Origin: Isurus oxyrinchus
Lineage: Eukaryota
Direction of reading: 5' to 3'
Assembly (NCBI GenBank): GCA_026770705.1
Contig: JANJGN010000041.1
Coordinates: forward strand, 6,696,001-6,760,000
Length of the DNA stretch: 64,000 nucleotides
Shown here in pieces: positions 5,880 through 62,317 of the stretch (the stretch's first letter is position 1; each line of letters starts with the position of its first letter). The notes under the pieces were generated by a model that did not search any database, was not told where the DNA came from, and worked only from the letters and a program-made list of their open reading frames with translations. The position numbers and the translations under genes were made by a program.

Positions 5880-6440
5880 TGATCACGGTAGCTCACTCTG
5901 CCATCATTGCTTTTGCGCACTTCCTGCTAAATCATTATATGTAGACACTATACCTGTAATCCATGATTTAATGCATTACCGTCTGTGATGCTTAAGATTG
6001 GGAAGATGGCTGATATTGTCCACATTTCCCAGCAATAACGGTTCCTGAACCAGTTTCTGGCCAATATCTGATGCTGAACCAGACAGATCAGAACCTCTGC
6101 CATCCATTTGACCCTGATTGACATGCGCCCCCATATCATCACACTCACCCAGTGCTTTTCACTCGATCCCCAACATTATATGAGAACATCTACTCCAGAT
6201 CACCCGCTGCCAAGGCCTCATCTGTTCTTTTGGGAAATCCAGGCTCAACTTTTCTAATTCTTTTCCTGGCAACACCAGTTACAATTCTGTATGAGCAAAA
6301 CTCATCTAAACAACTGCTGCCGATATCCGAACTCTCACAAAACCTCATTCAACCACAGCCCTTGTGCTCACTGACCTCTTTCGCTTTGGCAACAACTTAA
6401 ATTTAAATTGTATGTTGTTGTGATCCAATTCGTCCATGTC
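5880..6440 (+). mobile_element. L2-type LINE, 3' RT fragment
   Basis: Decayed match to the L2 ORF2 C-terminal region (LNQTxRNLxxxFDP...RPHI...SRLxxSN.LLA...KLI.N.AA). Confidence 0.55.
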
Positions 6441-6454
6441 GCCAAGATTACAAA

Positions 6455-6960
6455 CATACGAACACAGATAATATGAGCAGATGTAGGCTATTTGGCCCAT
6501 CGAGCCTTCTCCACCATTCAGAGAATTCATGGATGATCTGTTTGTGTCGACAAATTTCAAACTAACCCCATTAATTTTGATTCATTTTCATTGAAATAAT
6601 ATATTGACCACCATCTTAACAATATTCAATGTTCAAGCCTCCACCGCCTTCTAAGGCACAGAGTTCCAAAGTCAGATAAACCTCAAGGGGCAACAAGCAA
6701 AAAAAGCACAAACTCATAAACTCTGTCCTGAAAGGACAAAACTTTTTCTTTATTAAATAGATGCCTCTAATTCAGGGCTCACCCAACACATGAAAGATGG
6801 TTTCCCAATGCCTTGTCAAAAGCTTTCAGGTTCATATACACTTCAATTATTTCACCCCTCCCTCCTGTAAAATGCTGTGCAGGCAAAGATGATCTTCCTA
6901 CGCTTTCCTCACAAAACCTCCCATTCACTCCAGGTGACAACCTAGTGAGCCTTCTCTGAA
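6455..6960 (-). mobile_element. CR1 LINE 3' fragment
   Basis: Begins with the reverse-complemented CR1 3' end (gagcag.tgtaggc.atttggccc.tcgagcct.ctccaccattca). Confidence 0.6.
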
Positions 6961-6989
6961 GCGCGGGAAGTAGACGTGGATAGAGGACC

Positions 6990-8320
6990 AGTGACAGATG
7001 CAGATAGCCAAATACACCATCCCATTCTCTCAGTTCCTTCGATTCCGTCGCATCTGTTCTGATGATGCCACTTCCAAAAACAGTCTGATATATCCTCCTT
7101 CTTCCTTAACCAAAGTTTTACACCCACTCTGGTTGACCTGGCGTTCAACCATGTCCGGCCCATCGCCCGCACATCCGCCCTCACACATTCCTCTCCCTCC
7201 CAGAACCATGAAAGAGCCCGCATGTCCTCACTTAAAACCCCACCAGCCTCCAGATTCAAAGGATTATCCTCCACCATTTCTGCCAACTACAGCATGATGC
7301 CAGCACCAAACACATCCTCCCTTCACCCCCACTAACGGCATTCCACAGGGAGCACTCCCTCCTTGACACCCTGGTCCACTGCTCCATCACCCACTACACA
7401 TCTACCCCACACATAGCACCGTCCCCTGCACCCACAGAACGTGCAGCACCTGCCCCTTTACTTCCCCTCTCCTCACTGTCCATGTGCCCAAACCCTCCTT
7501 TCAAGTGAAGCAGCTTTTCACTAGCACTTCCCTCTATTTAGTCCACTGCATTCGTTTCTCCCAATGCCGTTTCCTCTCCATTGGTGAGAGCAAACGCAGA
7601 CAGGGTGTCTGCTTTGCAGAACACCTTCTGTCTGTCTGCAAGCATTACCAGACCTCCCTGCGCTTGCTATTTCAACACTCCACCCTGCTCTAATGCCAAA
7701 ATGTCCGTCCTTGGCTTGCTGCATAGTTCCAGTGAAGCTCAATGCAAACTGGAGGAACAGCACCTCCTCTTCCGAATAGGCACTTTACAGCCTTCCGGAC
7801 TGAATATTGAGTTCAACAATTTTAGATCATGAATTCTCTCCTCGATCCCCACCTACTTTCCGATACTCCCCCTTTTCCCAATAATTTATGTAGATTTTTT
7901 TTTTCATTTCCCTCATATTTCCATTATTTTTAGTTGTGTTTCCATACATTGCTTTATCTCTACCTGTTATCCTTTTTTCGATTCTTCACCACCATTACAG
8001 CTATCTGGTATTTGCTTTTCCTGCTTTCTATCCTTAATTAGCACATTCCTTACATAATATCACCACCTTCAACACCTCTTTGTCCTTTTGTCTATGACAT
8101 ATTTTGGCTATCTGCACATATCACTGGCCATCTATCCAGCTCTACTTGTGCCACCCACCCTTAAAAAGCCTATATTTCACATCTCTTCGAATTTTACTTA
8201 GTCTGTTCAAGAGCCATACGGTTTCGAAACGATAACTGTATTCCTGTCGCAGATTCTGGAAACCTGCTGAGTTTTTCCAGATATTTTTCTTTTTCTTTTG
8301 GATTTCCAGCATGCACAGAT
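6990..8320 (+). mobile_element. Penelope-like retroelement, 5'-truncated (thumb, GIY-YIG endonuclease, 3' pLTR)
   Basis: Translates as IPFSQFLRFRRICSDD, then FTSTSLYLVHCIRFSQC..SIGESKRR..FAEHL and EEQHLLFRIGTLQPSGLNIEFNNF, with frameshifts. The pLTR-like tail at 8115-8320 carries a decayed hammerhead core. Confidence 0.9.
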
Positions 8321-15884: not shown

Positions 15885-16789
15885 TCAATGGGTTTTCAGC
15901 AGTAATTTGCCAAATTTTAGGCACAGTTTCACAAGATACTGCATTCCACTCTTCAGCTCCTCCCTAAACCTAGCTTGTGTCAGCACATAAATGAATGTAT
16001 TTGTGCAGGAGCTGAGGGACCCAAGCATGAATCCAATTGACTCAAGCTCATTTGTGCCAGAATTCGATGTGATTTTTACATGCAGAGAGATAAAATATAT
16101 AACCGATGTGGTCCAGAGCACTATAAAGGTGCCAGTAATACTGAAGAGTAAAATAATGGACTTTCTTCGGCTTTCTATTTCAGAATCCTTCTGATGTTCT
16201 CCATTGATGCAACCGCGGAGACCCCTGCGAACTTTATTAGCCACCAAAATATGTCTTGCCGTCAAAACATTTAGTGACAAAATTAGAAAGAATGGAACAC
16301 CTGGGGTCAAGGTAAGGGTAAACAAGGCAAATGCGGCCCATTCAGCAGAAATGAAAAATGTCTGTTTTAGTACACAACCATGATTTACATTGTCCATTAT
16401 ATATGCAGGTTCATATGCAAAGTACCAGGGAATGTTTATCAAACAACTCAGTACACTCACCACTGATATGACAACTACCGCTGTTGTCTCCGTGCAATAT
16501 TTTTTTCGCAGTGTCTTACAACATATGACCACAAAACGATCGAAGGTGAACACGACTGTTAACCAGAAAGAGGCTGATATTGCTACATTAATCAGTGTCA
16601 CAGTTAGATAGCACACCGTGCTCGTGGTCAAGAATGAAACAGGGAAATAAATATTCAGCGTATTCTTCAGCATGACTTCAGCACAAACAACCAGGAGATC
16701 CATCGCGGACATGGCAATCATATAGTGGGTAATACATTTGGAGAGGCCACATTTTCCTCGGGAAAGAATCACAATCGTAACAACATTAA
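15885..16789 (-). CDS. GPR139/GPR142-like class A GPCR, exon 2 (end of TM1 to C-terminus)
   Basis: Open 905-nt exon after the acceptor ctctcttacag. Seven-TM hallmarks include VNVVTIVILSRGKCGLS, DLLV, WLTVVFTFDRFVVICC, RRKSIILLF and SSCTNTFIY. Ends at TGA 15885-15887. Confidence 0.92.
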
Positions 16790-19700
16790 CTGTAAGAGAG
16801 GGATAGAGAGTGCAGGAGGTTGATGGCACAGATCAACATGATTAATTTTCTTCCTGTTGCAGCAAGGAATCTTGCATTTGACCCAAAGATGCAGAGTTTG
16901 CATTTCGAGGCGAGCATGTTCTAAATGTAAACTGGACCTAGTGAAAGTGTATAGGGAAGAGAAACATCAGTTTATATTTTATCTTTTGATAGGAACATCT
17001 TCAACATAAACCTGCCAACAGTTGTAGAGAAAAGGATTGAGATTGCTGAATGTGAATGGGAACTGGACAATTTGAAAGCACACAAGTGGCTGGGCATGGT
17101 GAATATTAAAAGGTAAATGGGAGGTGTAAAGATTGAATTCATGTGTGCTGTTACAATGGGAAGTGGGAAATGAATGCACAAAATAAAATCTGGGCCAAGT
17201 AGAGTTATACTCTGGAAGACGTGGTGGTGCAATGCGAGGTCTATAATGTGCAAAGTACTGGGAAGGATGGCAGTGCTACAGGACTTACAGCTTGAAGGTA
17301 AAATATTGCCCAGGGCCACGAATATAACCTGAAAGATGGATGGTAAAAACATAGGGCCAAAGAATGTTCACTGAACTACATCAAAGAACAGCATAGACAA
17401 GGCCGAATGCCAGTTTGCACAGGAGTTATCACAGTGGCGGTACAATGACAATCAGTACAAAGTGACATTCTTATGCAGGCTCCCAGGGAGAAGTGTTATT
17501 CGGGAATGAGAGCTGATCAGTCATGTTTTTTAAGTCAGACTGAGTAACGTGAGATTGATATGCTTGATGGGCAATTTGCAGGATTATTTCAGGTGAATGC
17601 ATCGCTGATTCTTTGCAGAAACAGTGAAGCAACATTGCTATGCAGAATGGGTGCAGTCAGTGCTAATCAAGAAGGCATTTTAATGTCTGACTGGGAACGG
17701 TGACATTGCTATCAGAGTGAGTGGGCAATATTTATTGGCCATAGGGGAGAGTAGACAGGACAGCTTTTCCATTAACTGATTGGCTGCAGAACAAATCACT
17801 TTGTTGCTGAAAGGGCAGAACGGAGTCACTTGTATCTCAAGCACAGCATCCATACGAAGCGATTTGAAATGTGAAGCTGAAAATTGATTTTTCTTGGCAT
17901 GAAGTGCAAAAGACCATGATAAAGATTGACCGTGATGGGCACGTCGATTTGAGTCTCGAGACTAATATATGTTCAGAAAAGTGAAATTACGAATTGTCAA
18001 TGACCTGACGATAAAGACCTAACTGCTAACACACTCATGTTTAAATTAATTTTCTGTACAGCTTATTTCATTTCAGATTGGCCAGGCGTATGCAACCCAT
18101 GACTTCTAGCATTATTTGGTAAAATGCATATATCTTTTTTCAAAATGCAGCATTTTTTAGTGAATTAGCGAAGTTATTCAATGCTGCATTATTATACAGA
18201 AATTTAACTTAAAACACATATACTGATAACTGATTAAATTAAATGATCTATCAAAGTCAAGCCAAAATGATGTGTGCCTCAGTTAATCACGGTTGCATCA
18301 TGATTGCTTACTTACTAAATGATTGCTTACTGTTGCTTACTTACTAAACGTCCATTTGAATTTTGAAGAATAGATTTTCAAAGTGAATCTCACTGAACTG
18401 ATTTGTCGCAGCCACATATGTAATAATTTGACACGCACTTTTATTAAATTATTATTAGTATTTCGAATCAAATTAAATGCCTCTAGCCTGAATTTTCATC
18501 GAAAGTAGGTAACTGGCTCGCTGCCGTAATTTGTTTGTAGCTGTGGTTGCTATGCTATAGGATAGGATGTCAAGGCACTGGCAAAGGTGCAGAATAGCTT
18601 TCCGATTGAATTCTCCGATTAGATCAGGGAGGCACAGATTAGGGAATGTAAACTGCTCATTCCCAAAATAATGGTATGAGTAGATAGAGAGTACCAACTG
18701 TTTTCAAGGCTATGCTATATGGTGCAGACTGAACATAGAGTTTTCGCAAAGTTGAATTCAGGGAAACAACAGTGCATTGAAAGTCTATAAACGGGGTGGA
18801 GAAATAAAATTTTGAATCATATGAATTCAGTAATTGCTGGTTAATGATTTAGATGAACTTTGAATGAAGTAAGGCGAAATAGTCGGATAAATATCAGCAG
18901 CTTTTTACATTTTTGGAAAGATTGCAATTTGGCAATTTTAACCACACACGCAAAAAAAAATCTATTTGCGTTACATAAACAGTCCAGTTGGCAGCCTTTG
19001 AGTCACAATTCTCGAACTCGAATGCCATCATCAAACATTGATTGACTTAATGGAGCTGTTAAATATAATCACAAACAGCTTTGAAAATGCCAGGCAATGG
19101 ATAATAAATAAAGTTTGAGTTTCTCTTGACTTTGTAGACTGCACTGGAAAGGGTGGAGTCATTAGAATTCAAAGCTATTTTGACACAATTGCAGTTTAAA
19201 ATATGTCTCAAAATGAAACTTGACCTTCATTTACCCGATACCTGTTATTATTTGAGTAAACCTAATATATCTATTCCTACAATGACAAGCATTTAAACTG
19301 AGACACATAATTATCCGTGTGCTATTGTGATCTATACAAAGACTGTTCGTCAAGTTATCAACACTTGAAACTGTACTGGCGAGCACTGTAAATAAGGAAA
19401 ACGTTTAACAAGTACAGTAATTTAACCAATTGTATAATAAAGCAGCCAATGTTTGAACAAATAAATTATCAAAAGTATTATCCAATAACTTTTCAGTACA
19501 TTTCTAGAATTTTCTTCCGAATTAAACGTTGAAATGCCCCAGGAATTAACCATCCAATATATACCGAATGAAATAGTGATGCATCCAAAACATTGTCCGC
19601 TATTTAGCTAGCAAATTAAGTACACAGTCATTAAATATATTATCAACATTATTCCCTGCTAAATAAACTAGAGAAATGAACATATATATATGCTGCAGAT

Positions 19701-27040: not shown

Positions 27041-28096
27041 AGATTGCAAGCTGGATCCCAGTACATGGGGTCCTGAGGCCACCTTGTTAAAAGCAATGTG
27101 TTGTGCGTGCACCATATGCAGCATACAGCCGGTGCACCGGAATGCTGCTACTAAAATATGGGCTTCACAGGCCTTCTTCAGGCGAAACGCCCAATCGGGA
27201 TGGAGGATTGAGGTCCTGGGAAAGGCTGTGTTGGCCCCCAGTCAAAGTCAAAGTCGTGCACAAATGCTGCAGGTATGTGGTGGACATTCGGTACATGTTT
27301 CGATAAAGGGGTGCCTTTCCATACCTGCCTCTGCCACTAAGCATTTCTCGTTGAAAGGATGGCCAAAGGGAAAGGTGCCAGGCTACTCCCCAGGTCTCCC
27401 TAAAGCACGGGGGCTTTAACACCGGGAAGCGGGAGGAGAATGTTGCCGGACTTTTAGCCTGGCACAATGCGGTCCATCAAATCGAAAACTGCTTCAAGAC
27501 TCAGCGACTCAAAGGAGTGGTGGAAAGGCCGAGGCACAGCAAGTAAAAGTGAACCAACCTGGACCTTTGATTTCCACTCGTGAGTGCTGAAATCCTCTCC
27601 AATGGCGGATAGACATGTAGGTCCAGAATTGGAATCCTGGGTCATCTGAAATCACACTGAGCCGTAAGGACTTCATTGTAGGTACTAAGGGAATGCTACT
27701 GACGTCAATCAGTAGAAATATACAATTTCAGGAAGGTAGGGCACCTCCATATTTTCAATGGCAATATGGATCGTGCAATAACTTGTGGCCTATCTAACCA
27801 TATCCCCGCCACATGAATAGATACATTTGAAAACATGATTATGAACAAAATAACAAACATTCGGCATAACCAAATAGAGGAATCATCCAATGATTTCAGC
27901 ATTTGTGGAGAACAGGTTGAAGCACATTAAGGACAAGGAATCACGGGCAAAGATAATTTTTTCCGCCTGAACAGACGGTTTGTGCAGAATTTGCCAATCG
28001 ATTGTGCAAGTATAGACCTGATCTAATCACACTGACACTATTTTTTGCAGCGCTCTCACATGTTGAAGGACCGGGAAAATTAATCATCAAGATAGT

Positions 28097-28222
28097 TAGA
28101 CAGACAGACCAACAGACAGATAGACAGGCAAAACAGGTGCACAGAAAGACACATTCAAATGGATAGATTGATTTGAAGAGAGAGTTGTACGCGAGAGAGA
28201 GAGAGCGAGAGAGTGCGTGTGA
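28097..28222 (+). repeat. (AGAC)n/(AG)n microsatellite
   Basis: Direct inspection. Confidence 0.7.
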
Positions 28223-28257
28223 CAAATGGATCAAGCGAATGAAAGAACATGAGAATG

Positions 28258-29461
28258 NNNNNNNNNNNNNNNNNNNNNNNNNNNNNNNNNNNNNNNNNNN
28301 NNNNNNNNNNNNNNNNNNNNNNNNNNNNNNNNNNNNNNNNNNNNNNNNNNNNNNNNNNNNNNNNNNNNNNNNNNNNNNNNNNNNNNNNNNNNNNNNNNNN
28401 NNNNNNNNNNNNNNNNNNNNNNNNNNNNNNNNNNNNNNNNNNNNNNNNNNNNNNNNNNNNNNNNNNNNNNNNNNNNNNNNNNNNNNNNNNNNNNNNNNNN
28501 NNNNNNNNNNNNNNNNNNNNNNNNNNNNNNNNNNNNNNNNNNNNNNNNNNNNNNNNNNNNNNNNNNNNNNNNNNNNNNNNNNNNNNNNNNNNNNNNNNNN
28601 NNNNNNNNNNNNNNNNNNNNNNNNNNNNNNNNNNNNNNNNNNNNNNNNNNNNNNNNNNNNNNNNNNNNNNNNNNNNNNNNNNNNNNNNNNNNNNNNNNNN
28701 NNNNNNNNNNNNNNNNNNNNNNNNNNNNNNNNNNNNNNNNNNNNNNNNNNNNNNNNNNNNNNNNNNNNNNNNNNNNNNNNNNNNNNNNNNNNNNNNNNNN
28801 NNNNNNNNNNNNNNNNNNNNNNNNNNNNNNNNNNNNNNNNNNNNNNNNNNNNNNNNNNNNNNNNNNNNNNNNNNNNNNNNNNNNNNNNNNNNNNNNNNNN
28901 NNNNNNNNNNNNNNNNNNNNNNNNNNNNNNNNNNNNNNNNNNNNNNNNNNNNNNNNNNNNNNNNNNNNNNNNAGGTAGACAGANNNNNNNNNNNNNNNNN
29001 NNNNNNNNNNNNNNNNNNNNNNNNNNNNNNNNNNNNNNNNNNNNNNNNNNNNNNNNNNNNNNNNNNNNNNNNNNNNNNNNNNNNNNNNNNNNNNNNNNNN
29101 NNNNNNNNNNNNNNNNNNNNNNNNNNNNNNNNNNNNNNNNNNNNNNNNNNNNNNNNNNNNNNNNNNNNNNNNNNNNNNNNNNNNNNNNNNNNNNNNNNNN
29201 NNNNNNNNNNNNNNNNNNNNNNNNNNNNNNNNNNNNNNNNNNNNNNNNNNNNNNNNNNNNNNNNNNNNNNNNNNNNNNNNNNNNNNNNNNNNNNNNNNNN
29301 NNNNNNNNNNNNNNNNNNNNNNNNNNNNNNNNNNNNNNNNNNNNNNNNNNNNNNNNNNNNNNNNNNNNNNNNNNNNNNNNNNNNNNNNNNNNNNNNNNNN
29401 NNNNNNNNNNNNNNNNNNNNNNNNNNNNNNNNNNNNNNNNNNNNNNNNNNNNNNNNNNNNN
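28258..29461. other. Runs of N (28258-28972 and 28984-29461) separated by an 11-bp island
   Basis: Direct inspection. The five long X-containing ORFs across this interval are artefacts. Confidence 0.99.
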
Positions 29462-29751
29462 GATGCCGGAAATCCAAAACAACTTTCCCTGGAAAAACTC
29501 AGCAGGCCGTACAGCATTTGCGGAGAGAAAAACAATTAACGTTTCGAGCTTGTATGACTCTTCCACAGAAAGAAGGAATACTAGAAAAGAGGTGAAACAT
29601 AAGCTGGTTTAAGTGAGGGCGTGGGAAAAGTAGAGCAGGACAGAAGCCCAGTGATCACTATCAAACGGACTCGAAACGTTAACTGTGTTCCTCTCCACAG
29701 ATACCCCCAGACCTGCTGAGTGTTTTCCAAGTATTTTAGTTTTTGTTTTAG
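29462..29751. mobile_element. Inverted pair of Penelope pLTR fragments
   Basis: 29462-29655 is the reverse complement of the 8115-8315 pLTR. 29662-29751 is a plus-strand copy (ggactcgaaacgttaactg...cacagata..ccagacctgctgag). Confidence 0.8.
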
Positions 29752-41399: not shown

Positions 41400-42570
41400 C
41401 CGCTGTTGCATGTGCTACAGCTCAACTCTTCGCTGTTTCAGCATACCTGATGCTGCTCCTGACATTGTCTCTGCATTCCGCATTGTGCCATGTTTACACT
41501 CTTGATTTGGTGGTTATGGTGGATTGGGGTATATGCTGGGCCCTGATTGGTGATTGTGGTTCTGATACAATTCTGCTGCTGCTGATGGCCCACAGTGCCT
41601 CACATAGGCCCAGTTTAGCACTGCTAGTTCCGTTCTGAATGTAATAAATCTAAGACAGTGGTTGTGATGCTCAACACAGTAGAATGATTCCTCAGTGTGA
41701 AGACAACACTTCGGCTCCAAAGCTTTGTGCAGTGATCACTCCAGCTAAGACAACCATTGGCACATGCAACAGCGACAGTTGGTGAGGACAATATCGACAT
41801 GTTTTTTTTTTGCCTGCTGCTGGTTCTTTCACCAGTTGCCACAGAGCAACCCTGAAAGATATGTCCTATTATTATTCCTTTGGTTGGAGGTGTATGTGGC
41901 TAGGCCACATTTTCACTGCCAACTGTAAGTTGCCCCCCAGAAGGTGAGCAGGAGCCTTGTTCTTGAATCCTCGCCATCCAGCTTCTTCATGGCTCAGCCA
42001 ACTCGTGAGCCGTACCACTGCTGTGTCATTCCTGGAAAGGAACATCTGGGACTCACCATCAGAGTGCCATCTGCCATCCCAGTAATCCTTTAACTTGGTG
42101 TTCACCACATAGGAGAAACTATCCACCAGCTGAGGGGAGATGGTATTTGGGAAGAAGCAGGAGTCCTTCTTTCCTGTGTCTGAATGAATCTTCCTCTGAC
42201 CCAAGGCTCTGAGGAAGACTTACACGGACTCCAAATGTCCGTGGGTTTATTTCTTCTCCTCAGATGCTGTTAGATCAGCTTGGCTTTCCCAAATGTTGCT
42301 GGTTTTTCTGTCAGATTAGCAGCATCCGCAGTATTTTGCTTTTCTCCCCATTTTATATCTTTGCCCTGAAGCGCTGTGATGCACTGTAGAGTCTGAATTA
42401 AATGCTGGGAGCTCCACATTATTGCTCCACTGGATTGTCTGCCACTCCACCGTTACCCTGGTAGCCTCTGCCCTGCTCGTGGTGCAGGGCATATCCTGGA
42501 TTGTGCCGGAAGAGCTTGGGGCATTGGATGCAAATTGTGTGTGTCTGCGACCAGATCTGTCGTGGTATTA
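41400..42570 (-). mobile_element. CR1-group LINE endonuclease fragment 3' of the intact defensin, interrupted by later insertions
   Basis: 42400-42570 reverse complement reads as decayed IPGY.L.H.Q.R....GG (APE). 41400-41820 continues the same element. A Penelope pLTR piece sits at ~42208-42343. Confidence 0.6.
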
Positions 42571-42686
42571 TCCCATGTCAAAGCGGTCCTGCCATTTGTC
42601 GACCTCCCCCTTCATCCCCTGTCAGTGCGTGGTGATGTAAATGTGAAATGAGCAACGGACAAGAGAAGGTGATCAATGCAGCTGGT

Positions 42687-42692
42687 TTTATT
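42687..42692 (-). promoter_or_regulatory. Poly(A) signal of the intact beta-defensin-like gene
   Basis: AATAAA about 120 nt past the stop, in a GTGAATAAAAC..GCTGCA context shared with the paralogs. Confidence 0.75.
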
Positions 42693-42813
42693 CACAGGAA
42701 GGAGAAAACAGTGTGCCACGTGGTGCTGCATCTAGTAACTTACAGAAATGACAGTCAGCTTCAGTGGGAGCCTCAGACGGGAATCAGAATGGTACATGTT
42801 TACTTTTAGTGAC

Positions 42814-42932
42814 TCAATCCTTCATGCAGCACTTGAAGAAAGGAAGACATTTCTCTTTGACGCGGGTCTCAGCTCCCTTACAGCGGCGGAATCTGCATTT
42901 CCCTCCAACGCTGGGACATCCCAGTAAACTAC
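42814..42932 (-). CDS. Beta-defensin-like gene, exon 2 (mature peptide)
   Basis: Acceptor ctcctgtctcttcaccag, then (G)SLLGCPSVGGKCRFRRCKGAETRVKEKCLPFFKCCMKD*. Cysteine pattern C-x6-C-x4-C-x10-C-x5-CC, net charge about +7, no stops. Confidence 0.9.
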
Positions 42933-43706
42933 CTGGTGAAGAGACAGGAGGAGGTTATTGACGCCACGAGCCAGGAAAGTCGATTGTGGCCAAAACATGG
43001 AAAATGTGCACTGTTCCCCAGGTGTGGTCTATCAGAGCCACTTTATCTCTGCATTTTAATCAAGAGAGCGCCTCACAAATAGAAATGGTGGTTTGGGCTT
43101 TACACAGCCAGAATGAAAGCAACTTCTGTCGCACCTTCAATTTAATATAAAACCAATTAGTGAACTTAACAGGAACATGATGAAAAACAACTTATACCAA
43201 GCCTCATGAGCAGAGGGAGGGATTTCAGGGACATCTGAAGACACAGCCTCCAATGTTGGATTCACATTCTGACAGTATCTGTGGGGCGCAGGTATCCCCT
43301 CAGGGTTGTGAGACTGCAGGACACGACAGGGATGGAGGTGGAGACAACAAATGGGAAAGGGGAAATAGGGAAGGATTTGTCCACACGGTATTGTGTTCAT
43401 GGAATACATCACCAAGGGGTCGAATGCAATTGAGAAATACGTGGGGAAAAGGAGAACTGTTTCTATGATAAGCCTCGCTGCTGGTTATCTAAATAAAAAA
43501 AAAACAATTTTAGCGAATTGTGTGAAAATGCACAAAACTAAAATTGTTAGATTTGCATTTGGAAATAATTTTAACTGTTCTAGGCTGGTGGAGTAAAGCA
43601 AATATCTGTCCTGTACCAATTCGGTGTTAGAACAGTCTTGAGTGGTTGAAGGGACTCCTGTTCCAATCAATATTGCTCAAGAATCACTATTGAGAGACAC
43701 GCTCAC

Positions 43707-43797
43707 CTCCCAATTGCACAATCTCTTGGAGCGAGATAGAGAGAGTCTCTCCCAGCAACAGGAATCCAAGTACCACGAACAGAGCTTTCGACATCAT
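43707..43797 (-). CDS. Beta-defensin-like gene, exon 1 (signal peptide and short propiece)
   Basis: MMSKALFVVLGFLLLGETLSISLQEIVQLG. The 91-nt phase-1 exon ends GGAG|GTGAGC and splices in frame to exon 2 for a 69-aa precursor. Confidence 0.88.
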
Positions 43798-43845
43798 ATC
43801 CTGAGCTCCTGAGAGTCACAAGGAGATAACCAGACACCAATGTTC

Positions 43846-43905
43846 TTTATAGTAATTGAGCGACTGTTCACGAGTTAATAATAACACGCACGCAATGGGG
43901 ATTGG
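43846..43905 (-). promoter_or_regulatory. TATA box (43846-43851) and CCAAT box (43901-43905) of the defensin gene
   Basis: TATAAA lies ~50 nt upstream of the ATG and GCCAATC a further ~50 nt upstream. The TATA context is conserved in the paralogs at 53673 and 61697. Confidence 0.75.
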
Positions 43906-44209
43906 CTGCACTTTAACAGTGATGACGACGCAATAACTCTTCCAAGTCGGATGTGTGGTAATTAAGAGGGAGACAGGTCTGTGTAATGATTGAACTGGAG
44001 GTTTAGTAAACAACGTCACTGTGTTAGAAGTAAGAATCATATTGCACAAAATAAGGCCATTCTGGCCATTTAGCCTCTCTTGACGCTTAGCCAGAGCTAC
44101 CGAATTCTGCCGACTCTATATCTACTCATTCTCCATAGCTCTGTCATTTTTAAATTTTCAAATTCAATCATTTCAACAAGTGCATAATCTTCCATTATCC
44201 TTCCAGGAA

Positions 44210-47500: not shown

Positions 47501-47664
47501 TGGGGAAACATCTTCATCACCATTCACTCTCCTAGGACAGTAATGACCTGCAGGGAGGGAGGGTACCTATCAGCCTGGCCCGTGTTTCAAAACCATCCAT
47601 TGCCCCTCCTCCTTTATGTAGAATGTATGGCATTTCCCTTGTGCCCAGTCCCATCTGCATAACC

Positions 47665-48371
47665 CTTGGTTAGACTAGACTTGGAACATGGTGCATAGTT
47701 CTGGTCTCCCTATCCCTCTGTTTGACCACACCTGGAGCACTGTGCACGGTTCGAACCTCCATGTCCCTCGGTTCGACTACAACAGGAGCCATGCGCACAG
47801 CTCTGGTCTCCACACCCCTCTGTTAGACCACACATGTAGCTCTGTGTACAGTTCCATCCGCCATATGAATCAGTTATACCACACTTGGAGCACTGCGCAC
47901 AGCTCTGGCCTCCATATACCACGGATGGACCACACGTAGAGAACTGTGCACAGTGCCAGCCTCCATTGAACTCGGTTAGACCACACTTGGAGCACTGCGC
48001 ACAGTTTCAGCCTCCATATATCTCGGATAGACCACACTTATAGAACTGTGCACAGTGCCAGCCTCCATTTGGCTCGGTTAGACCACACTTGGAGCACTGT
48101 GCACAGTTCCAACCTCCATCTCCCTCAGTTAGACCACAGTTGGAGCACTGCGCACAGTTCCAGCGTCCATATATCTCGGATAGAACACACCTAGAGAACT
48201 GTGCACCGTTCCAGCTCCATATTCCTCGGTTAGAGCACACTTGGAGCACTGTCCACTGTTCCAGCCTCCATATCAATTGGTTAGACCACATTGGAGCAGC
48301 ACGCACATTTCTGGTCTCCATATCCATTGGTTAGACCACAGCTGGAGAACTGTGCACAATTCTGGGTTCCA
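47665..48371 (+). repeat. 51-bp CR1-derived minisatellite, ~14 units (intron of pseudogene A)
   Basis: Unit approximately GGTTAGACCACACTTGGAGCACTGTGCACAGTTCTGGTCTCCATATCCCTC, starting at 47668, 47719, 47770 and so on to 48329. Confidence 0.92.
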
Positions 48372-48451: not shown

Positions 48452-48570
48452 GACAACGCAGAGAGTGTGCTGATTTTGGAGGCGCTTGCAGATTTGTCCG
48501 ATGTAACAGATATGAGAGGCTGTTTTAGGCATATTTCATATTTTGGCTCACCTGCTGCATAAGAAAATAG
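48452..48570 (+). pseudogene. Beta-defensin-like pseudogene A, exon 2
   Basis: 119 nt, same length as the intact exon: QRRECADFGGACRFVRCNRYERLF*AYFIFWLTCCIRK*. Premature TAG at 48526 and Cys4 lost. AATAAA at 48705-48710. Confidence 0.88.
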
Positions 48571-48829
48571 TTGTCTAAACATAACATGTCCCTATGTGCG
48601 ATATGCTCATGGCTGCGACTGGTGCTAACTGTAATTCCATAAATCCTGCTCTGATACATTCTGAGAATCCAGTGACCCCGGCCCACTGCTTTCTGTAGCA
48701 TGTGAATAAAACTGGCTGCATCGATCACTGCCTCTTGTCCATGTCTCAATTCGCACTCAGATCGGTGCATCACCATATCAGCATGGAATGAGGGGAGGTC
48801 ACGTAATGGCAGGGCCACATTGACACCCG

Positions 48830-49660
48830 GCTGCTCCTACATAATCACATTGGAAGAATCATAACTGAAAAGGAAATGTCACAGGCTCATCGCCCACATC
48901 CCAGGATAAGTTATGACCCACTGAATGAAAAGTTCTTCCTGACGTGCTGGCACAGGGAAATCCATAAGTGTAGGCTTGTGACAGGAGTGCTCAGTAAAGA
49001 CTCCAGTCTCTCTGATGTCTCAGGAGAGGTAGGCAAACAGTAGAAAGGGAGCATCTTGCTGACTCCCACATACCATTTTCCAGAATCTGTTCAATATATA
49101 CTCCTCCATGTTAAACACAGCATGGAATAAGCACTGAGCATATCAAATGCACATAATGTTCTCTGCTGTGGCACCGGCATGTCCATCACCAAGAGTGGCT
49201 CAGGGTCACCGTTACAGACCTAAGTGTCCGAGCCCGGAATGGCAGAATAGGCCTGAGGCAGGTGAACCAACAAGAGGGATGTTTCTACACGACATCATCC
49301 TCAGCAATGTACCTGCTGCAGTTGCATCAGTCCCTGACAGTGTTGATAGTAACGACCACCAAACAGGCCTTGTGACGACGGAGTCCTGTCTTCGCACTGA
49401 GGACAGACTCCATTAAATTCTCTGGCAATCATTGGATTCAGTGGGATAGATTCAGACCAGATCACACAGTTCAAATCTCAATATCCCCAACCCGTCAAGG
49501 GCCATCAGCAGCAGCAAAATTAAATTCAAATACAACCTGCAAATGTCATTGCCTGGCATATTCCTGACACCATCATAACGTTCAAGGCAAGGGATCAAGC
49601 CTGATTCACTGAAGAATACAGGAGGGAGTGTCAAGTGCAAGGCCAGCATATCGAAAAGAA
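48830..49660 (+). mobile_element. CR1-group LINE APE fragment co-duplicated with the defensin unit
   Basis: EPTRG.FL.DIILSNVPAAVASV.DSV.SNDH motif. Confidence 0.75.
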
Positions 49661-53450: not shown

Positions 53451-53672
53451 AATTTTCACAGTGAAGAATTCCTTCAATCCTTCACCTGGTCAATCATTAC
53501 ACTTTTCAGTGTCTCTGCTGATTAATAAAATCCTTTTTGGGAGGCAGATTTAGACGTGGATTCCAGTTAATGTCAGTCTCAGTTAGTAATGTGTTCCTTT
53601 GACGTGCACAAGGTTAAACCAACACTCACCGTGTGTCTGCAATTATTAACGACAAAATTCTCTGTCTGTTCA

Positions 53673-53791
53673 TATAAAGAGCCTCCGTATACCAATCATC
53701 TCACTGTGACTCTGGCGAACTCAGGGGATGAGGTGGAAAGCACTGGTCTCGGTGGTTTGACTGCTGGAGCTGGTGGAATCCCAGCGTATCG
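53673..53791 (+). pseudogene. Beta-defensin-like pseudogene B, TATA box and exon 1
   Basis: TATAAA at 53673 and ATG at 53728: MRWKALVSVV*LLELVESQRI. It aligns codon for codon with the intact exon 1 (GGA changed to TGA). Possible donor GTAGGT at 53792. Confidence 0.8.
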
Positions 53792-54464
53792 GTAGGTTAT
53801 CCAAAGAGGTTATCTCAGAGTTGTCAAACTCTAGAAACATTCCCTGGAACAGGAAAAGGCCATTCAGCCCCTAAACCATGTACACTCATTCAATTGGATC
53901 ACAGCTGACAACTGTCTTAACGCCAATGGACAATTTTCGTTCCATGACCATTAAAATCCTGTCCAAACAGAAAGCTGTCAGTCTCTGTGTGAGCCTTTTT
54001 TTCAAAAACTGGACAATTTATTTTTAATGACCCAACCTCAACTATTAACCACCGAGGAGCTGTCCCTTGGTGATATCTTGAATTAATCATACAGAATGTT
54101 TCCCAATGTCTCCATTGTCTCATCCCACTCTCTCTCTGACATCTCCTTTAACCCAAACAGCCGTCCAGATACCCATGCCGCACAAATTCTGCCCTCCAAT
54201 CCATTTGAAATATTAATTGGCCTGCCATTGGTCACGGTGCCTTCAACTGACTGGGACCAAGGCCGGAAGTTCCCATTGTAAAACTATCCAACCCTCTCTC
54301 CTCCCTGGTGATAGCCCTTCAATCCACCATCTTCGAGTTAGCGTTGGGTCACGTTCCACTAATCCCTGTTGATGTGACTCTGTGTCAAATCATTTTTCTA
54401 ACATGCTGTCTTGAGGCACCGCGTGAAATTTCATAAAGTTGTTGCATAAGCTGCATCATTCTGA

Positions 54465-55068
54465 TTGTACACTCTTCAGGACTCCATATCCCTCGGTTAG
54501 ACCACAGATAGTGCATTGTGCACAAATCTGGTCTCCAATGCACTTGGTTAGAGAGCACTTTTAGCACTGTGCAGTTTTGGTATCCATATACTTCAGTTAG
54601 ACCGAATTCGGAACACTGTGCACATTTCTGATCTCAATATCCCTCGGTTAGATCACACTTAGAGCGCTGTGCACAGTTCTACCCTCTGTATGCCTCGGTT
54701 GGACCACACATGGAGCACTCTGCACATTTCTGGTCTTCATATCTCTCGGTTAGAACACACTCGGATCACTGAGCATATTTTTGATCGCCAGATCCCTCAG
54801 TTAGACCACAGTCCGACAATGTACATAGTTCTGGTTTCCACACTCCACGGATAGACCACACTTTGAGCACTGTGCAGAGTTTTGGTCTCGACACCTCTCG
54901 GTTAGACCACAATCGGAGCACTGTGCACAGTTCCCTCACCATATCCCTCGGCTAGACCACAGTTGGAACACTGTGTACTGCTCTGGTCTCCATATGCCTC
55001 GGTTAGACCACATCTGGACCAATGTTCACATATCTGGTGCCCATGTGCGCACTTTAGCCCACAACTGG
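54465..55068 (+). repeat. 51-bp CR1-derived minisatellite, ~12 units (intron of pseudogene B)
   Basis: Same unit as 47665-48371. Confidence 0.9.
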
Positions 55069-55137
55069 TTCAGGTGCATGTGGGTGCCCAACGGTTCTGA
55101 CCAGCGTCACTAATGAGCTCTTTCTTTCTGTTTCCAT

Positions 55138-55265
55138 ACCCTATCGTGCTGTGTGATGGGGGTGGAATGTTCTAGAGAAGACTCCCATGTGAAGATTGTG
55201 ATGCATACAGGGCCAATGGGAAATGCAGCCGCCCCTTTATATTCAGGAGCTGCCAACCGCTTTGA
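55138..55265 (+). pseudogene. Beta-defensin-like pseudogene B, exon 2
   Basis: PIVLCDGGGMF*RRLPCEDCDAYRANGKCSRPFIFRSCQPL*. The Cys2 position is TAG, Cys5 is AGC and the acceptor is mutated to CAT. The 3' UTR is homologous to the paralogs but its poly(A) signal is mutated (~55403). Confidence 0.72.
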
Positions 55266-55667
55266 GTAACCCAGAGGCAGGATGTCCCACTGCGAGACCT
55301 GCCTGAGGCTCCGACTGAAGCGAATTGGAATTTCTGTCATTCAGGCTCTGCTACATTCAAAAGGTCCAGTGGCCAATGATCCAATGTTTTCTGAATCATG
55401 TGCGTAAAACTGGCTGCGTTGAACACCACTTGTTATCTGTGTCTCATTTCTCATTCAGGTTGGTGTATCAACCTACCGACAGGGAGTGAGGGGAGGTAAG
55501 GTTATGGCCGGGCCATACTGTCTTTCTTTAGATCCAAAACAGACACCATCACAGTGTCTTTCCTTATGGTTAATGCCCCAGGTTCACCTATTGCGATCCC
55601 TGTGTACGTTCTGCCACACAGACCCTCAAAATCTGAAGGCACAGTGGTAGAGTTCGGGTAGGAGAGG

Positions 55668-60240: not shown

Positions 60241-60497
60241 AGGACCTGAATGTGGCCCTGCCATTGACGGACCTCCCCATTCCCTTCCTGTCAATGTCAG
60301 GTATCAGAGTGAGAAGTTAGAAACCTACAGGAAGTGGTGCTGCCAGTTTTATTCATATGATTGAGGAACCAGTGGGTCAGGGGGCACGGGGACTACACAG
60401 TCCGTGGAGCCTCAAGGCGGTGCTTGAATCATGGGCCCTTATTTCGGGCTGTTGTCGCTGGCCTTGGCTGCCAACCACTGACTCCTTTTTCTCTGAC

Positions 60498-60617
60498 TCG
60501 CTTTGCCATGCAGCTTTAAAACAACCAATAGAGGTCGTTGCGATTCAAACCCTCGTTTCTGCGGCAGTGCCCAGATCGCCAGTTGCCCATTAATTCCGTC
60601 ACATGCAACGGAAAAAC
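60498..60617 (-). pseudogene. Beta-defensin-like pseudogene C, exon 2
   Basis: Acceptor ttctgcatttcag. The 120-nt exon is the 119-nt intact length plus a 1-nt insertion: FSVACDGING/NWRSGHCRRNEGLNRNDLYWLF*SCMAK. Cys2 is TGG, Cys5 is AGC, and the old stop is now CGA. AATAAA at 60348-60353. Confidence 0.78.
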
Positions 60618-60769
60618 CTGAAATGCAGAATGAAATCCTCTGTTGATGCCACCAGTAAGGACCCTCGACTCTCGCTCAACCACTTCTTATTTATCACTCT
60701 CAAAGTTGAATGCCCTCTTTCATAACCATACCCGATATTGCATCTTTGCCAGTTTGGTCTGTGAGGTAT

Positions 60770-61252
60770 TGCCAATGGACATGGAGAATAGAACAATGCA
60801 CAGTGCTCTACGGGAGGTGTAACCAAGGTAGATGCAGAGCGGAACTGCACCCAGTGATCCAGTTGTGGTCTAACCAAGCGATATGGAGACCAGAACTGTG
60901 TACAGTCCTTCAGGTGTCGTCTAACCAAGGGATATGAAGGCTACAACTGTGCACAGTGCTTTGAGTTTGGTCCAACCAACGGAGGTGGAGACCATAATTG
61001 TGCACAGTGCTCCATGTGTTTCAACCAAAGAATATGGAGGCCGGAACAGTGCATAGTTCTCCAGGTGTTGTCCAACCAAGGCATATGGTGACCTGAGCTC
61101 TGCACAGTGCTCCACGTGTGGTCTCACTGACAGATATAGAGACCAGAAAAATGCACAGTGCTCCATGTGTGATCTAATTGGCGGATATGGAGACCACAAA
61201 TGTACACTGTGCTCCAAGTGGGGTCGCACCGAGGGATATGAAGACCTGAACT
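60770..61252 (-). repeat. 51-bp CR1-derived minisatellite, ~9-10 units (intron of pseudogene C)
   Basis: Reverse complement of the same unit. Confidence 0.9.
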
Positions 61253-61568
61253 CTAATTAACAACTACAAATTCATAGATTTTTGCTGCAATTTTAAGATT
61301 CCATCGGGTCAGATGTGGAGGCTGGAGCAAAATTAAACAAAAAAATAAACAGTATAAAAACATGTCCTTATTTTGCGAGCATTCCCACACTGAGATTGGA
61401 AGCTTTGTGTAACATGGTGCGGTTCATGTTCCAGAACAAAGCCGGATAAATTGATTTAAAAACAGATCAAAATGATCCAGTTGAATGGCAGCACGTTTGA
61501 TTGGGTGATTGGCCTACTTCTATTCCTGTGAATGGTTTCATAGATTGGCGACAGAGAGGTTAGCTAAC

Positions 61569-61704
61569 CTCCCTAAACATACTTTGTGGCGATGATGTGT
61601 CCCAGCATCAGGAATACAATGACAAAGAGCTGTGCTTTCCTCATTTTCCTATGAGATACTCACAGCTACAGTGAAGTGTCTGGGCTACAGGAGCTCTTTG
61701 TATG
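61569..61704 (-). pseudogene. Beta-defensin-like pseudogene C, mutated TATA box and exon 1
   Basis: CATACAAAGAG at 61694-61704 and ATG at 61644: MRKAQLFVIVFLMLGHIIATKYV*G. The 76-nt phase-1 exon ends GGAG|GTTAGC, like the intact gene. Confidence 0.8.
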
Positions 61705-62317
61705 AACTCAGAGTATAAACTGTAGTTAATGAGCACACATAGACACCCATACAGACACGCTGAGGATTGGCTCCACCTTGGGCACATTGAAGGGATAGGT
61801 CACTCACTGAGAGGAACAGTGACTAGCAACAATGTGTAAATGTGCCTCGCAAGGCAAGTATGTGTCAATGAAAAGAGACCGCCCTGTGTCAGCATTGAAC
61901 ATGGGAAGGTTTATAGAAATATCTTTCTGCGATTAAGATAAGGATAATACAGCAGAGAAGAGGGCCATTCGGCCCATTGTACTTATGTCGCCTCCCTGAA
62001 GGAACTATCCAAGTATTCCCACGCTTCTTTCCTCTGTCAATATGCCAGCTGTTTTAATTGGCCCTCATGATCCACCCTATAGCGTCACGTGTCCCCACAC
62101 CCACCATTTCAGTACCCGTTCGCTTACACAGAATCTACTTTCCAATGTACAGGTCGCCAGAGAATAGTCAGCAATGGATTCTCTTCCTGTTTGCGAGCTG
62201 ACACCTGTGGTATCCCCTTAGGATCTGCGACCCTGCCTCCCAACACCCACACCGCCACCAACACCCACAGCCTCTACTCCACCACCCCTCACCCTCCCAC
62301 AGCTCCTACACATTACG

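What the first reader, a model, noticed from the sequence alone, without database searches (positions are those of the whole stretch)
42687..43905. Intact two-exon beta-defensin-like gene missed by the ORF track
Seen in sequence: CCAAT, TATA, a 91-nt exon, a 774-nt GT-AG phase-1 intron, a 119-nt exon and AATAAA, all on the minus strand. The spliced product is MMSKALFVVLGFLLLGETLSISLQEIVQLGGSLLGCPSVGGKCRFRRCKGAETRVKEKCLPFFKCCMKD (69 aa). Established knowledge: a signal-peptide exon, phase-1 intron and C-x6-C-x4-C-x9/10-C-x5/6-CC cationic exon is the vertebrate beta-defensin architecture, and such short genes are often missed by annotation. Inference: this is a secreted antimicrobial peptide of a cartilaginous fish, a lineage where I know of few characterised beta-defensins. 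It lacks the usual Gly of the GxC motif before Cys4 (KEKC), so it may be a divergent subfamily.
Basis: partly seen in the sequence, partly recalled or inferred. Interest (0 to 1): 0.92.

Follow-up and report, generated by a model that had tools for sequence, protein, structure and literature searches.

The report
Intact beta-defensin-like gene in shark
A small two-exon gene in a shark genome looks like an undamaged member of the beta-defensin family of secreted defence peptides, sitting beside three dead copies, but there is no evidence yet that it is expressed.

Summary
On the minus strand there are a CCAAT box, a TATA box, a 91-nt signal-peptide exon, a 774-nt GT-AG phase-1 intron, a 119-nt six-cysteine cationic exon and AATAAA, at the stated coordinates.

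The cysteine pattern occurs once in the window. It appeared in 4 of 300 (loose) and 1 of 300 (strict) random sequences.

Beta-defensin kinship is supported but sub-threshold:
- Pfam Defensin_beta is the only family hit, at E 0.71 and 10.4 bits against a cutoff of 21.
- The only PDB sequence hit is avian beta-defensin 3, E 0.018.
- The single-sequence model has three strands, and nearly all of its structural neighbours are defensins.

Three decayed paralogues lie in the same window. A neighbouring receptor gene shows that the genome is elasmobranch.

No RNA run was found. The runs I laid are unspliced DNA of a sequence about 5% diverged, which keeps the frame and all six cysteines. Expression, disulfide pairing and antimicrobial activity are untested.

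First readers of this scan noted similar clusters 0.9-5.5 Mb away in this genome. I did not check those notes.

Verdict: a probable new member of a known family, of moderate interest.

The parts
43901..43905 (-). CCAAT box, about 108 nt upstream of the ATG
   Evidence: Read and found by the motif scan. It is kept in copy D and altered in copy C in alignment A2.
43845..43851 (-). TATAAAG box, 54 nt upstream of the ATG. The implied transcription start is near 43820 (inference).
   Evidence: The homologous box is present in copy C and mutated in copy D.
43707..43797 (-). Exon 1 coding part, 91 nt. It holds a tandem ATG, one Lys, an 11-12 residue hydrophobic core, small residues at 18 and 20, and a short pro-segment.
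   Evidence: One search gives the translation (30 codons) and the sequence. The signal-peptide reading is by eye only, with no predictor run.
42933..43706 (-). Phase-1 GT-AG intron of 774 nt. It holds one unit of the 51-bp repeat at about 43002-43040.
   Evidence: One search shows the donor GAG|GTGAGC, the polypyrimidine tract and CAG|G. One search shows the repeat unit matching 48070-48108 at 82% over 39 nt.
42814..42932 (-). Exon 2 coding part, 119 nt including TGA. It encodes a six-cysteine cationic domain with spacing C-6-C-4-C-10-C-5-CC.
   Evidence: translation; Pfam; PDB sequence; protein atlas; model and fold searches; charge and pI.
42687..42813 (-). 3' UTR ending in AATAAA at 42692-42687
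   Evidence: The UTR and downstream sequence are homologous to copies B and C (70% over 148 nt and 66% over 175 nt).
48452..48830 (+). Paralogue relic B. Exon 2 has an in-frame TAG and Cys4 replaced by Phe. Its 3' UTR carries AATAAA at 48705-48710. A 51-bp array lies upstream at 47664-48362. No exon 1 was recognised.
   Evidence: tblastn E 8.5e-4; sequence; array and UTR homology; alignment.
53610..55455 (+). Paralogue relic C. It has a TATAAAG box, and exon 1 from 53728 has a stop after 10 codons. The 51-bp array is at 54475-55038. Exon 2 lies at about 55140-55268 with TAG at the Cys2 position. The polyadenylation signal is mutated (55403-55408).
   Evidence: homology and sequence; alignments.
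60255..61780 (-). Paralogue relic D. It keeps the CCAAT box but its TATA box is mutated. Exon 1 from 61644 has an in-frame TAG two codons before the donor. The 51-bp array is at 60816-61252. Exon 2 lies at about 60505-60616, is frameshifted and has lost cysteines. AATAAA is at 60348-60353.
   Evidence: sequence; array; alignments.

Best explanation
This is a real, structurally intact member of a locally duplicated, rapidly turning-over beta-defensin-like gene family of an elasmobranch. A TATA/CCAAT promoter would drive an mRNA of roughly 380 nt (inference). Exon 1 would encode a signal peptide and a short pro-segment. A phase-1 intron would be removed. Exon 2 would encode a domain of about 38 residues with a net charge of about +7 and six cysteines. 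That domain would fold into a three-stranded, three-disulfide beta-defensin fold and be secreted as a host-defence peptide. What is shown: the anatomy, the paralogue family, beta-defensins as the only detectable relatives, and the predicted fold. What is inferred: transcription, splicing, signal cleavage, the C1-C5/C2-C4/C3-C6 pairing, and membrane-active antimicrobial or immunomodulatory action.
For: Anatomy: it is complete and in phase. Chance: the cysteine pattern is unique in the window and rare by chance, at 4 of 300 loose and 1 of 300 strict simulations. Sequence: the only Pfam family at E<=10 is Defensin_beta, aligned over positions 5-35 of a 36-position profile. The only PDB sequence at E<=10 is avian beta-defensin 3 (7lzl_A, E 0.018, 18.8 bits), with all six cysteines aligned. 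The three listed ESM Atlas clusters are all beta-defensin, scoring 0.87, 0.83 and 0.76, the first sharing 188 of 256 features. Fold: the best AlphaFold2 single-sequence model has pLDDT 75.8 with strands at 10-14, 23-27 and 32-36. Of 23 Foldseek PDB rows, 14 are beta-defensins, 5 alpha-defensins, 3 defensin-like toxins and 1 unrelated; the top row is AvBD3 with prob 0.97, TM 0.61 and rmsd 1.6 over 29 columns. In a search independent of Foldseek over 48,161 chains, 26 reached Z>=2: 13 beta-defensins, 6 alpha-defensins, 5 cnidarian cysteine-rich peptides, 1 big defensin and 1 unrelated; the top is human BD-2 at Z 4.2. Family context: three homologous units in the window share promoter, exon 1, intron repeat and 3' UTR, and each carries two or more disabling lesions, while the focal copy has none. 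Among copies, the exon-2 coding part is the most diverged segment (35-51% identity), against promoter 58-64%, exon 1 52-65% and 3' UTR 53-68%. That is the pattern expected of defensin paralogues. Constraint: under neutral decay only 1.1% of simulated copies at 10% per-lineage divergence, and 0.13% at 15%, keep the ATG, frame, GT/AG and six cysteines. A sequence about 5% diverged in four runs keeps the exon-2 frame (0 gaps) and all six cysteines. Published gene structure: a phase-I intron just 5' of the cysteine domain is the feature shared by beta-defensins and big defensins (PMC7203481, passages).
Against: The Pfam score (10.4 bits) is below the gathering cutoff (21), and E 0.71 is not significant. 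No relative was found among 22-70 aa proteins of the 5.8-billion collection. The phmmer scan of 1.84 billion representatives gave only 2 hits at E<=0.001, both unrelated repeat proteins. No RNA run holds the locus, and no spliced joint was seen. Three of the four copies in the window are dead, so this family dies often. All 7 coding differences from the diverged sequence are nonsynonymous, and the coding part differs by 7/119 against 14/288 for the whole contig, so neutral drift is not excluded. Four of the 5 AlphaFold models had pLDDT 45-55. No Foldseek row reached E<=0.001, and the highest VIA Z is 4.2, below the level the tool calls distinctive. The Gly before Cys4 is missing. No NF-kB consensus lies in the 600 nt upstream.
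Confidence: 0.6

Rival explanations
1. It is an intact-looking but silent copy: a young or dying member of a birth-and-death family. It is no longer transcribed, or only at trace level, and has simply not yet acquired a disabling lesion.
For: Three of the 4 units in the window are pseudogenes. No RNA holder was found and no joints were seen. All 7 coding differences from the roughly 5% diverged sequence are nonsynonymous, and the coding part diverges as fast as the intron. At 5% per-lineage divergence, 10% of neutral copies would still look intact.
Against: The other copies are 35-68% identical to it, so the split is old. At 10-15% per-lineage divergence only 1.1% to 0.13% of neutral copies remain intact. 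The CCAAT box, TATA box, donor, acceptor and AATAAA are all consensus here, whereas copies C and D have mutated boxes. The lack of RNA evidence reflects a lack of RNA runs, not a negative result (one search says so).
Confidence: 0.25
2. It is an expressed beta-defensin-fold peptide whose main role is not killing microbes. It could be a receptor ligand (chemokine-like or melanocortin-like signalling), a reproductive-tract peptide, or a toxin-like channel modulator.
For: The fold neighbours include crotamine, sea-anemone neurotoxins, APETx1 and helianthamide as well as defensins. A member of a GPCR family that is hugely expanded in elasmobranchs lies 26 kb away. No NF-kB consensus lies in the promoter.
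Against: The best sequence and fold matches are classical antimicrobial beta-defensins. The net charge of +7 and pI 9.5 fit membrane-active peptides. Proximity to the GPCR may be chance and nothing links the two.
Confidence: 0.12
3. It is not a beta-defensin relative at all. It would be either a chance ORF or an unrelated cysteine-rich peptide family that converged on the same cysteine spacing.
For: All sequence statistics are sub-threshold: Pfam E 0.71 and PDB E 0.018. No library-wide homologue was found. A single-sequence AlphaFold model may simply echo the cysteine pattern.
Against: The pattern is expected 0.003-0.013 times per window by chance. It also comes with a phase-matched signal exon, promoter, polyadenylation signal and three paralogous units. 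Non-cysteine residues also align with avian beta-defensin 3, at 48% identity over 29 columns in the Foldseek alignment. The intron phase and position match the family's hallmark.
Confidence: 0.03

Closest known systems
Avian beta-defensin 3 (mallard AvBD3, PDB 7lzl) and other avian and crocodilian beta-defensins
   Same: It is the only PDB sequence hit (E 0.018), with all six cysteines aligned. It is also the top Foldseek row, with prob 0.97, TM 0.61 and 48% identity over 29 columns.
   Different: The C3-C4 loop is one residue longer here (10 against 9). The Gly two residues before Cys4 is Glu here (alignment). Recalled, not tested: avian genes are usually described as having four exons.
Mammalian beta-defensin genes (for example human DEFB4/hBD-2 and hBD-4)
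   Same: [quoted passage not shown] These are the top VIA-align neighbours, at Z 4.2 and 4.0. The genes are clustered, with the mature-peptide exon diverging fast (the mammalian pattern is recalled).
   Different: Sequence identity is only 22-26% in the structural alignments. The lineage is cartilaginous fish.
Teleost beta-defensins
   Same: These are secreted six-cysteine cationic peptides of fish, with a prepropeptide of 60-77 aa and a mature peptide of 38-45 aa (PMC3978493). Here the product is 69 aa by count.
   Different: Teleost genes have three exons and two introns, with the cysteines spanning two exons (PMC3978493). Here a single exon holds all six. The net charge here is about +7, against the +1 to +5 quoted for fish.
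Invertebrate and amphioxus big defensins
   Same: They share the phase-I intron immediately 5' of the C-terminal cysteine-rich domain (PMC7203481). The C-terminal domain of oyster big defensin appears among the fold neighbours at Z 2.2.
   Different: There is no N-terminal hydrophobic domain here. Exon 1 encodes only about 30 residues of signal and pro-segment.

Membership tests
Vertebrate beta-defensin (Pfam PF00711 Defensin_beta) | Six cysteines spaced roughly C-x4-8-C-x3-5-C-x9-13-C-x4-7-CC (range recalled) | tested here: met
   The spacing is C-6-C-4-C-10-C-5-CC. It is the only match to the pattern in the window.
Vertebrate beta-defensin (Pfam PF00711 Defensin_beta) | Scores at or above the Pfam gathering threshold | tested here: not met
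   It scores 10.4 bits, E 0.71, against a cutoff of 21. It is the only family reported, and the match covers positions 5-35 of the 36-position profile. Only exon 2 was scored, because the joined product was not searched.
Vertebrate beta-defensin (Pfam PF00711 Defensin_beta) | Signal-peptide exon, then a phase-1 intron just upstream of the cysteine domain | tested here: met
   Searches show the structure. The intron falls 5 codons before Cys1 and the split codon is G|GT. The hallmark is described in PMC7203481. The signal peptide was judged by eye only.
Vertebrate beta-defensin (Pfam PF00711 Defensin_beta) | Three-stranded antiparallel beta-sheet fold | tested here: inconclusive
   The model has three strands and pLDDT 75.8, but it is a single-sequence model and 4 of 5 models scored 45-55. 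The neighbours are almost all defensins, but with Foldseek E>=0.24 and VIA Z<=4.2.
Vertebrate beta-defensin (Pfam PF00711 Defensin_beta) | Disulfide pairing C1-C5, C2-C4, C3-C6 | not testable with these tools
   Model coordinates are not readable here. The test needs disulfide mapping or NMR of the folded peptide.
Vertebrate beta-defensin (Pfam PF00711 Defensin_beta) | Cationic mature peptide | tested here: met
   The exon-2 peptide has 10 K+R against 3 D+E, and pI 9.5.
Vertebrate beta-defensin (Pfam PF00711 Defensin_beta) | Conserved Gly in G-x-C before Cys4 (motif recalled) | tested here: not met
   The residues before Cys4 are K-E-K, where AvBD3 has G-R-C. The G-x-C before Cys2 is present. 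Relic C keeps G-K-C before its Cys4 equivalent (read by eye).
Vertebrate beta-defensin (Pfam PF00711 Defensin_beta) | Tandem or inverted gene clusters with birth-and-death turnover and a fast-evolving mature exon | tested here: met
   There are four units in 19 kb, one of them intact. Exon 2 is 35-51% identical among copies, against 52-68% for the other parts.
Vertebrate beta-defensin (Pfam PF00711 Defensin_beta) | Expressed, with antimicrobial or immunomodulatory activity | not tested
   No RNA holder was found. The laid runs are unspliced DNA contigs.
Big defensin | N-terminal hydrophobic domain preceding the beta-defensin-like domain | tested here: not met
   Only 30 residues (signal and short pro-segment) plus 5 residues of exon 2 precede Cys1. 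No Pfam big-defensin hit was reported.
Alpha-defensin | Cysteine spacing starting C-x-C, with 1-6/2-4/3-5 pairing (recalled) | tested here: not met
   Cys1 and Cys2 are six residues apart. Alpha-defensins appear only as lower-ranked, shorter fold matches of 28-30 aligned residues.

The most novel reading that the evidence does not exclude
This locus is part of a large, unannotated, multi-cluster beta-defensin array in an elasmobranch. That would place beta-defensins before the split of cartilaginous and bony vertebrates. It would also make the two-exon layout, with all six cysteines in one exon behind the big-defensin-type phase-1 intron, the ancestral jawed-vertebrate state, and the teleost three-exon layout derived. 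Bolder still: the rapidly diversifying peptides could be ligands for the co-located GPR139-like receptor family, which is massively expanded in elasmobranchs.
Probability: 0.4. Interest if true: 0.65.

Novelty: new member of a known kind. Interest (0 to 1): 0.45.

Why it matters
[quoted passage not shown] A 2019 comparative-immunology review lists only transferrin, squalamine and kenojeinin as elasmobranch antimicrobials (PMC6795676, section 14 read whole).

A real shark beta-defensin family would fill the gap between amphioxus and invertebrate big defensins and the beta-defensins of bony vertebrates. It would bear on which exon-intron layout is ancestral. It would also give comparative immunologists candidate peptides that must work in a high-salt, high-urea body fluid.

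Its presence is not surprising on evolutionary grounds, and this copy has no expression evidence. The value lies in annotation and in making the question testable, not in overturning anything.

Tried and rejected
Homologue retrieval led nowhere.
- The word-indexed search with exon 2 found no candidate.
- The exhaustive phmmer scan gave two hits. P0001 is a repetitive product that looks like a sequencing artefact, and P0002 is a long repeat protein. I rejected both as unrelated.
The genome and metagenome collections of the search for related loci hold no vertebrates, so I did not use them.

RNA evidence was not obtained. The run search listed 11 runs. Six hold 0.22-0.23 of the words and none of these is on record as RNA. 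The five guessed RNA runs hold next to none. At first I thought a share of 0.22 might mean a spliced transcript. Laying four of the six holders (X1-X4) refuted that: the contigs cover the intron, cross both splice sites unspliced and show no joints. They are DNA of a sequence about 5% diverged, whether orthologue, paralogue or haplotype I cannot tell.

A promoter scan for NF-kB, AP-1, ISRE, ETS and Oct consensus sites found none. It found only C/EBP-like, STAT-like, GATA-like and HNF1-half matches, which I do not treat as evidence.

A competing ORF on either strand and any Rfam RNA were considered and rejected. Exon 1 alone hit no Pfam family.

On whether this is in print: searched the held library. 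None of the listed titles or abstracts reports a chondrichthyan beta-defensin. In one search only the first 2 of the 30 listed rows hold 'defensin' together with a shark or skate name, and neither reports one. Most subscription journals in fish immunology are not in that library, so prior publication is not excluded. I requested no supplementary files.

The joined 69-residue product was not typed, searched or folded. Each exon was handled apart.
Full report
OBSERVATION. I read 42500-44100 on the minus strand and translated each exon apart. All claimed elements are present:
- CCAAT at 43905-43901 and TATAAAG at 43851-43845.
- A tandem ATG starting at 43797.
- Exon 1 at 43797-43707 (91 nt: 30 codons plus one base).
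- A donor GAG|GTGAGC.
- An intron of 774 nt (43706-42933).
- A 20-nt tract with 18 pyrimidines ending CAG|G.
- An exon 2 coding part at 42932-42814 (119 nt, 38 codons after the split codon, then TGA).
- AATAAA at 42692-42687.

The split codon reads G|GT, so the intron is phase 1 and the product has 69 residues by count. All searches used exon 1 or exon 2 alone.

IS IT MORE THAN CHANCE? A six-frame scan of the 64-kb window for the beta-defensin cysteine pattern finds this site only. In 300 first-order Markov simulations of the window, 4 held a loose match and 1 a strict match. That is before requiring the adjacent acceptor, a phase-matched hydrophobic leader exon, or the TATA and AATAAA signals. 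No other ORF of note overlaps: all 17 ORFs of 40 aa or more are under 100 aa. No Rfam family lies in 40000-64000.

WHAT THE PEPTIDE RESEMBLES. The exon-2 peptide has 38 residues, 6 Cys, 10 K+R against 3 D+E, and pI 9.5.
- Pfam: Defensin_beta is the only family, aligned over profile positions 5-35 of 36. It scores only 10.4 bits (E 0.71) against a cutoff of 21. Exon 1 hits nothing.
- PDB by sequence: the only hit at E<=10 is avian beta-defensin 3 (7lzl_A, E 0.018, 18.8 bits). All six cysteines and several non-cysteine residues are aligned, with one gap in the C3-C4 loop.
- ESM Atlas: the three listed clusters are all beta-defensin, scoring 0.87, 0.83 and 0.76. The first shares 188 of 256 features. 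All three scores are below 0.9, which the tool treats as a lead only.
- Structure: a single-sequence AlphaFold2 run gave one model at pLDDT 75.8 with strands 10-14, 23-27 and 32-36. The other four models scored 45-55.
- Foldseek against the PDB: no row reached E<=0.001. Of the 23 rows at E<=10, 14 are beta-defensins, 5 alpha-defensins, 3 defensin-like toxins and 1 unrelated. The top row is AvBD3 with prob 0.97, TM 0.61 and rmsd 1.6 over 29 columns.
- VIA-align, independent of Foldseek, against 48,161 representative chains: 26 chains reached Z>=2. They are 13 beta-defensins, 6 alpha-defensins, 5 cnidarian cysteine-rich peptides, 1 big-defensin C-domain and 1 unrelated. The best is human BD-2 at Z 4.2.

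Each statistic is weak, because the domain is tiny. They all point the same way and nothing else competes.

LIBRARY-WIDE SEARCHES WERE BLANK. A 40-residue contiguous reference (six intron bases added) found no protein of 22-70 aa sharing three 5-residue words. phmmer against 1.84 billion representatives returned two hits at E<=0.001, and both are unrelated repeat proteins. The same collection holds NCBI-annotated proteins of many sharks and rays. It also means I have no independent shark homologue.

THE GENE IS ONE OF FOUR UNITS. tblastn and blastn of the focal unit against the window, followed by reading and aligning, show three further units.
- Unit B (+ strand). Exon 2 lies at about 48452-48571, with an in-frame TAG and Phe at the Cys4 position. 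It has a homologous 3' UTR with AATAAA. No exon 1 was recognised.
- Unit C (+ strand, about 53610-55455). It has a TATAAAG box. Exon 1 stops after 10 codons, exon 2 has TAG at the Cys2 position, and the polyadenylation signal is mutated.
- Unit D (- strand, about 60255-61780). It keeps the CCAAT box, but its TATA box is mutated. Exon 1 has an in-frame TAG two codons before the donor. Exon 2 is frameshifted and has lost cysteines.

The introns of the three dead units hold 8.6-13.7 copies of a 51-bp repeat. The focal intron holds a single unit.

Pairwise identity among units is 58-64% for the promoter, 52-65% for exon 1 and 53-68% for the 3' UTR and downstream. It is only 35-51% for the exon-2 coding part (the pseudogene exon borders are approximate). 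The mature-peptide exon is thus the fastest-diverging part of the unit, as is described for defensin paralogues (recalled).

A neutral-decay simulation, with exons kept apart and indels at a tenth of the substitution rate, leaves the following fractions of copies with ATG, frame, GT/AG and six cysteines intact:
- 10% at 5% per-lineage divergence.
- 1.1% at 10% per-lineage divergence.
- 0.13% at 15% per-lineage divergence.

Given the depth of divergence between units, the focal copy was probably under constraint for most of its history. This is an inference and depends on the assumed rates.

TAXON. The 314-codon ORF at 15885-16829 (-) is a rhodopsin-family receptor (7tm_1, E 4.3e-19). Its best relatives are from Cetorhinus maximus (80%) and Carcharodon carcharias (79%). 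All 120 listed hits come from sharks or rays and most are named GPR139-like. The window is therefore elasmobranch, probably a lamniform shark or close to that order.

READS. The run search listed 11 runs. Six runs of one coded organism hold 0.22-0.23 of the sampled words and none is on record as RNA. The five guessed RNA runs hold next to none.

I laid four of the six holders (X1-X4). Contigs cover exons, intron and flanks, cross both splice sites unspliced, and show no joints. They are DNA and differ from the window by about 5%, for example 14 of 288 letters and 0 gaps for the contig over 42738-43025. I cannot tell whether they represent an orthologue, a paralogue or a haplotype.

Seven differences fall in the exon-2 coding part. 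All seven are nonsynonymous: S1T, V8S (two letters), F14L, R16L, A20G and E26K in exon-2 numbering. None touches a cysteine or the frame. With 23.3 synonymous and 90.7 nonsynonymous sites, this fits either diversifying selection or drift and is not significant either way.

Summed contig depth over exon 1 and the promoter is several-fold higher than over exon 2. This suggests that more paralogues share the leader exon. There is therefore no evidence on transcription at all.

MECHANISM. The most likely reading (confidence about 0.6) is as follows:
- A TATA/CCAAT promoter yields a short mRNA.
- Exon 1 gives a signal peptide, cleaved probably after residue 18 or 20 (by eye), and a short pro-segment.
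- Exon 2 gives a cationic domain with three disulfides and three strands.
- The domain is secreted and acts on microbial membranes and/or immune cells, like other beta-defensins.

Only the anatomy, the family context and the resemblance are shown. The rest is inferred.

RIVALS.
- A silent copy not yet broken (0.25).
- A defensin-fold peptide with a non-antimicrobial role (0.12).
- Chance or convergence (0.03).

COMPARISON WITH WHAT IS KNOWN. The two-exon layout with all six cysteines in one exon matches human beta-defensins. It differs from teleosts, which have three exons with the cysteines spanning two (PMC3978493, passages). The phase-I intron just 5' of the cysteine domain is the feature that links beta-defensins to big defensins. 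[quoted passage not shown] A 2019 review of fish immunity names only transferrin, squalamine and kenojeinin for elasmobranchs (PMC6795676, section 14 read whole).

Six full-text searches listed no paper reporting a chondrichthyan beta-defensin. The library lacks most subscription journals, so I cannot claim it is unpublished.

Membership tests gave this result:
- Met: cysteine spacing, gene architecture, cationic charge and cluster behaviour.
- Not met: the Pfam threshold and the Gly before Cys4.
- Inconclusive: the fold.
- Untested: disulfide pairing and activity.

I therefore call it beta-defensin-like and a probable new member. I do not call it a proven member.

EARLIER NOTES OF THIS SCAN. 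First readers had already noted this four-unit cluster and the 51-bp repeat. They had also noted several similar clusters 0.9-5.5 Mb before this window. I confirmed the first. I partly confirmed the second: the arrays are real, but their proposed CR1 origin was not tested. I could not read the distant clusters.

No signal-peptide predictor was available and model coordinates could not be read. I requested no supplementary files.

VERDICT. The finding is a new member of a known kind, with interest 0.45.

Noticed in passing
window 15885-16829 (-): An intronless 314-codon rhodopsin-family GPCR ORF (7tm_1, E 4.3e-19). The search found 1700 proteins at E<=1e-20 among 3203 candidates. All 120 listed are from sharks or rays, mostly named GPR139-like, so the family looks hugely expanded in elasmobranchs. 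The ORF lies 26 kb from the defensin-like gene.
   Followed up: partly
window 47664-48362, 54475-55038, 60816-61252; single unit at about 43002-43040: A 51-bp minisatellite is expanded to 8.6-13.7 copies in the introns of the three dead defensin-like units. It is present as one unit in the intron of the intact gene.
   Followed up: partly
window about 43870-43880 (-), with homologous positions in units C and D (alignment A2): A short ATTAAC-containing element between the CCAAT and TATA boxes is invariant in the three aligned promoters. It matches an HNF1 half-site consensus on the opposite strand. Its meaning is unknown.
   Followed up: no
window 43634-43903 compared with 42738-43025, in runs X1-X4: In the DNA runs of the roughly 5% diverged organism, summed contig depth over exon 1 and the promoter is several-fold that over exon 2, with many contigs at 90-95% likeness. 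This suggests many paralogues share the leader exon.
   Followed up: no
window 28258-28972 and 28984-29461: Two runs of N (1193 letters in all). They explain the low GC and the long artefactual ORFs in 27941-29612.
   Followed up: no
window 6001-8000: A strong negative GC skew (-0.361) in one 2-kb bin, far from the values of the neighbouring bins. I did not examine it.
   Followed up: no
protein P0001 (representative library): The top phmmer hit is a 417-aa product made of an exact repeated unit. It looks like a translated sequencing or assembly artefact rather than a real protein. It is a reminder that short cysteine- and arginine-rich queries attract such junk.
   Followed up: no
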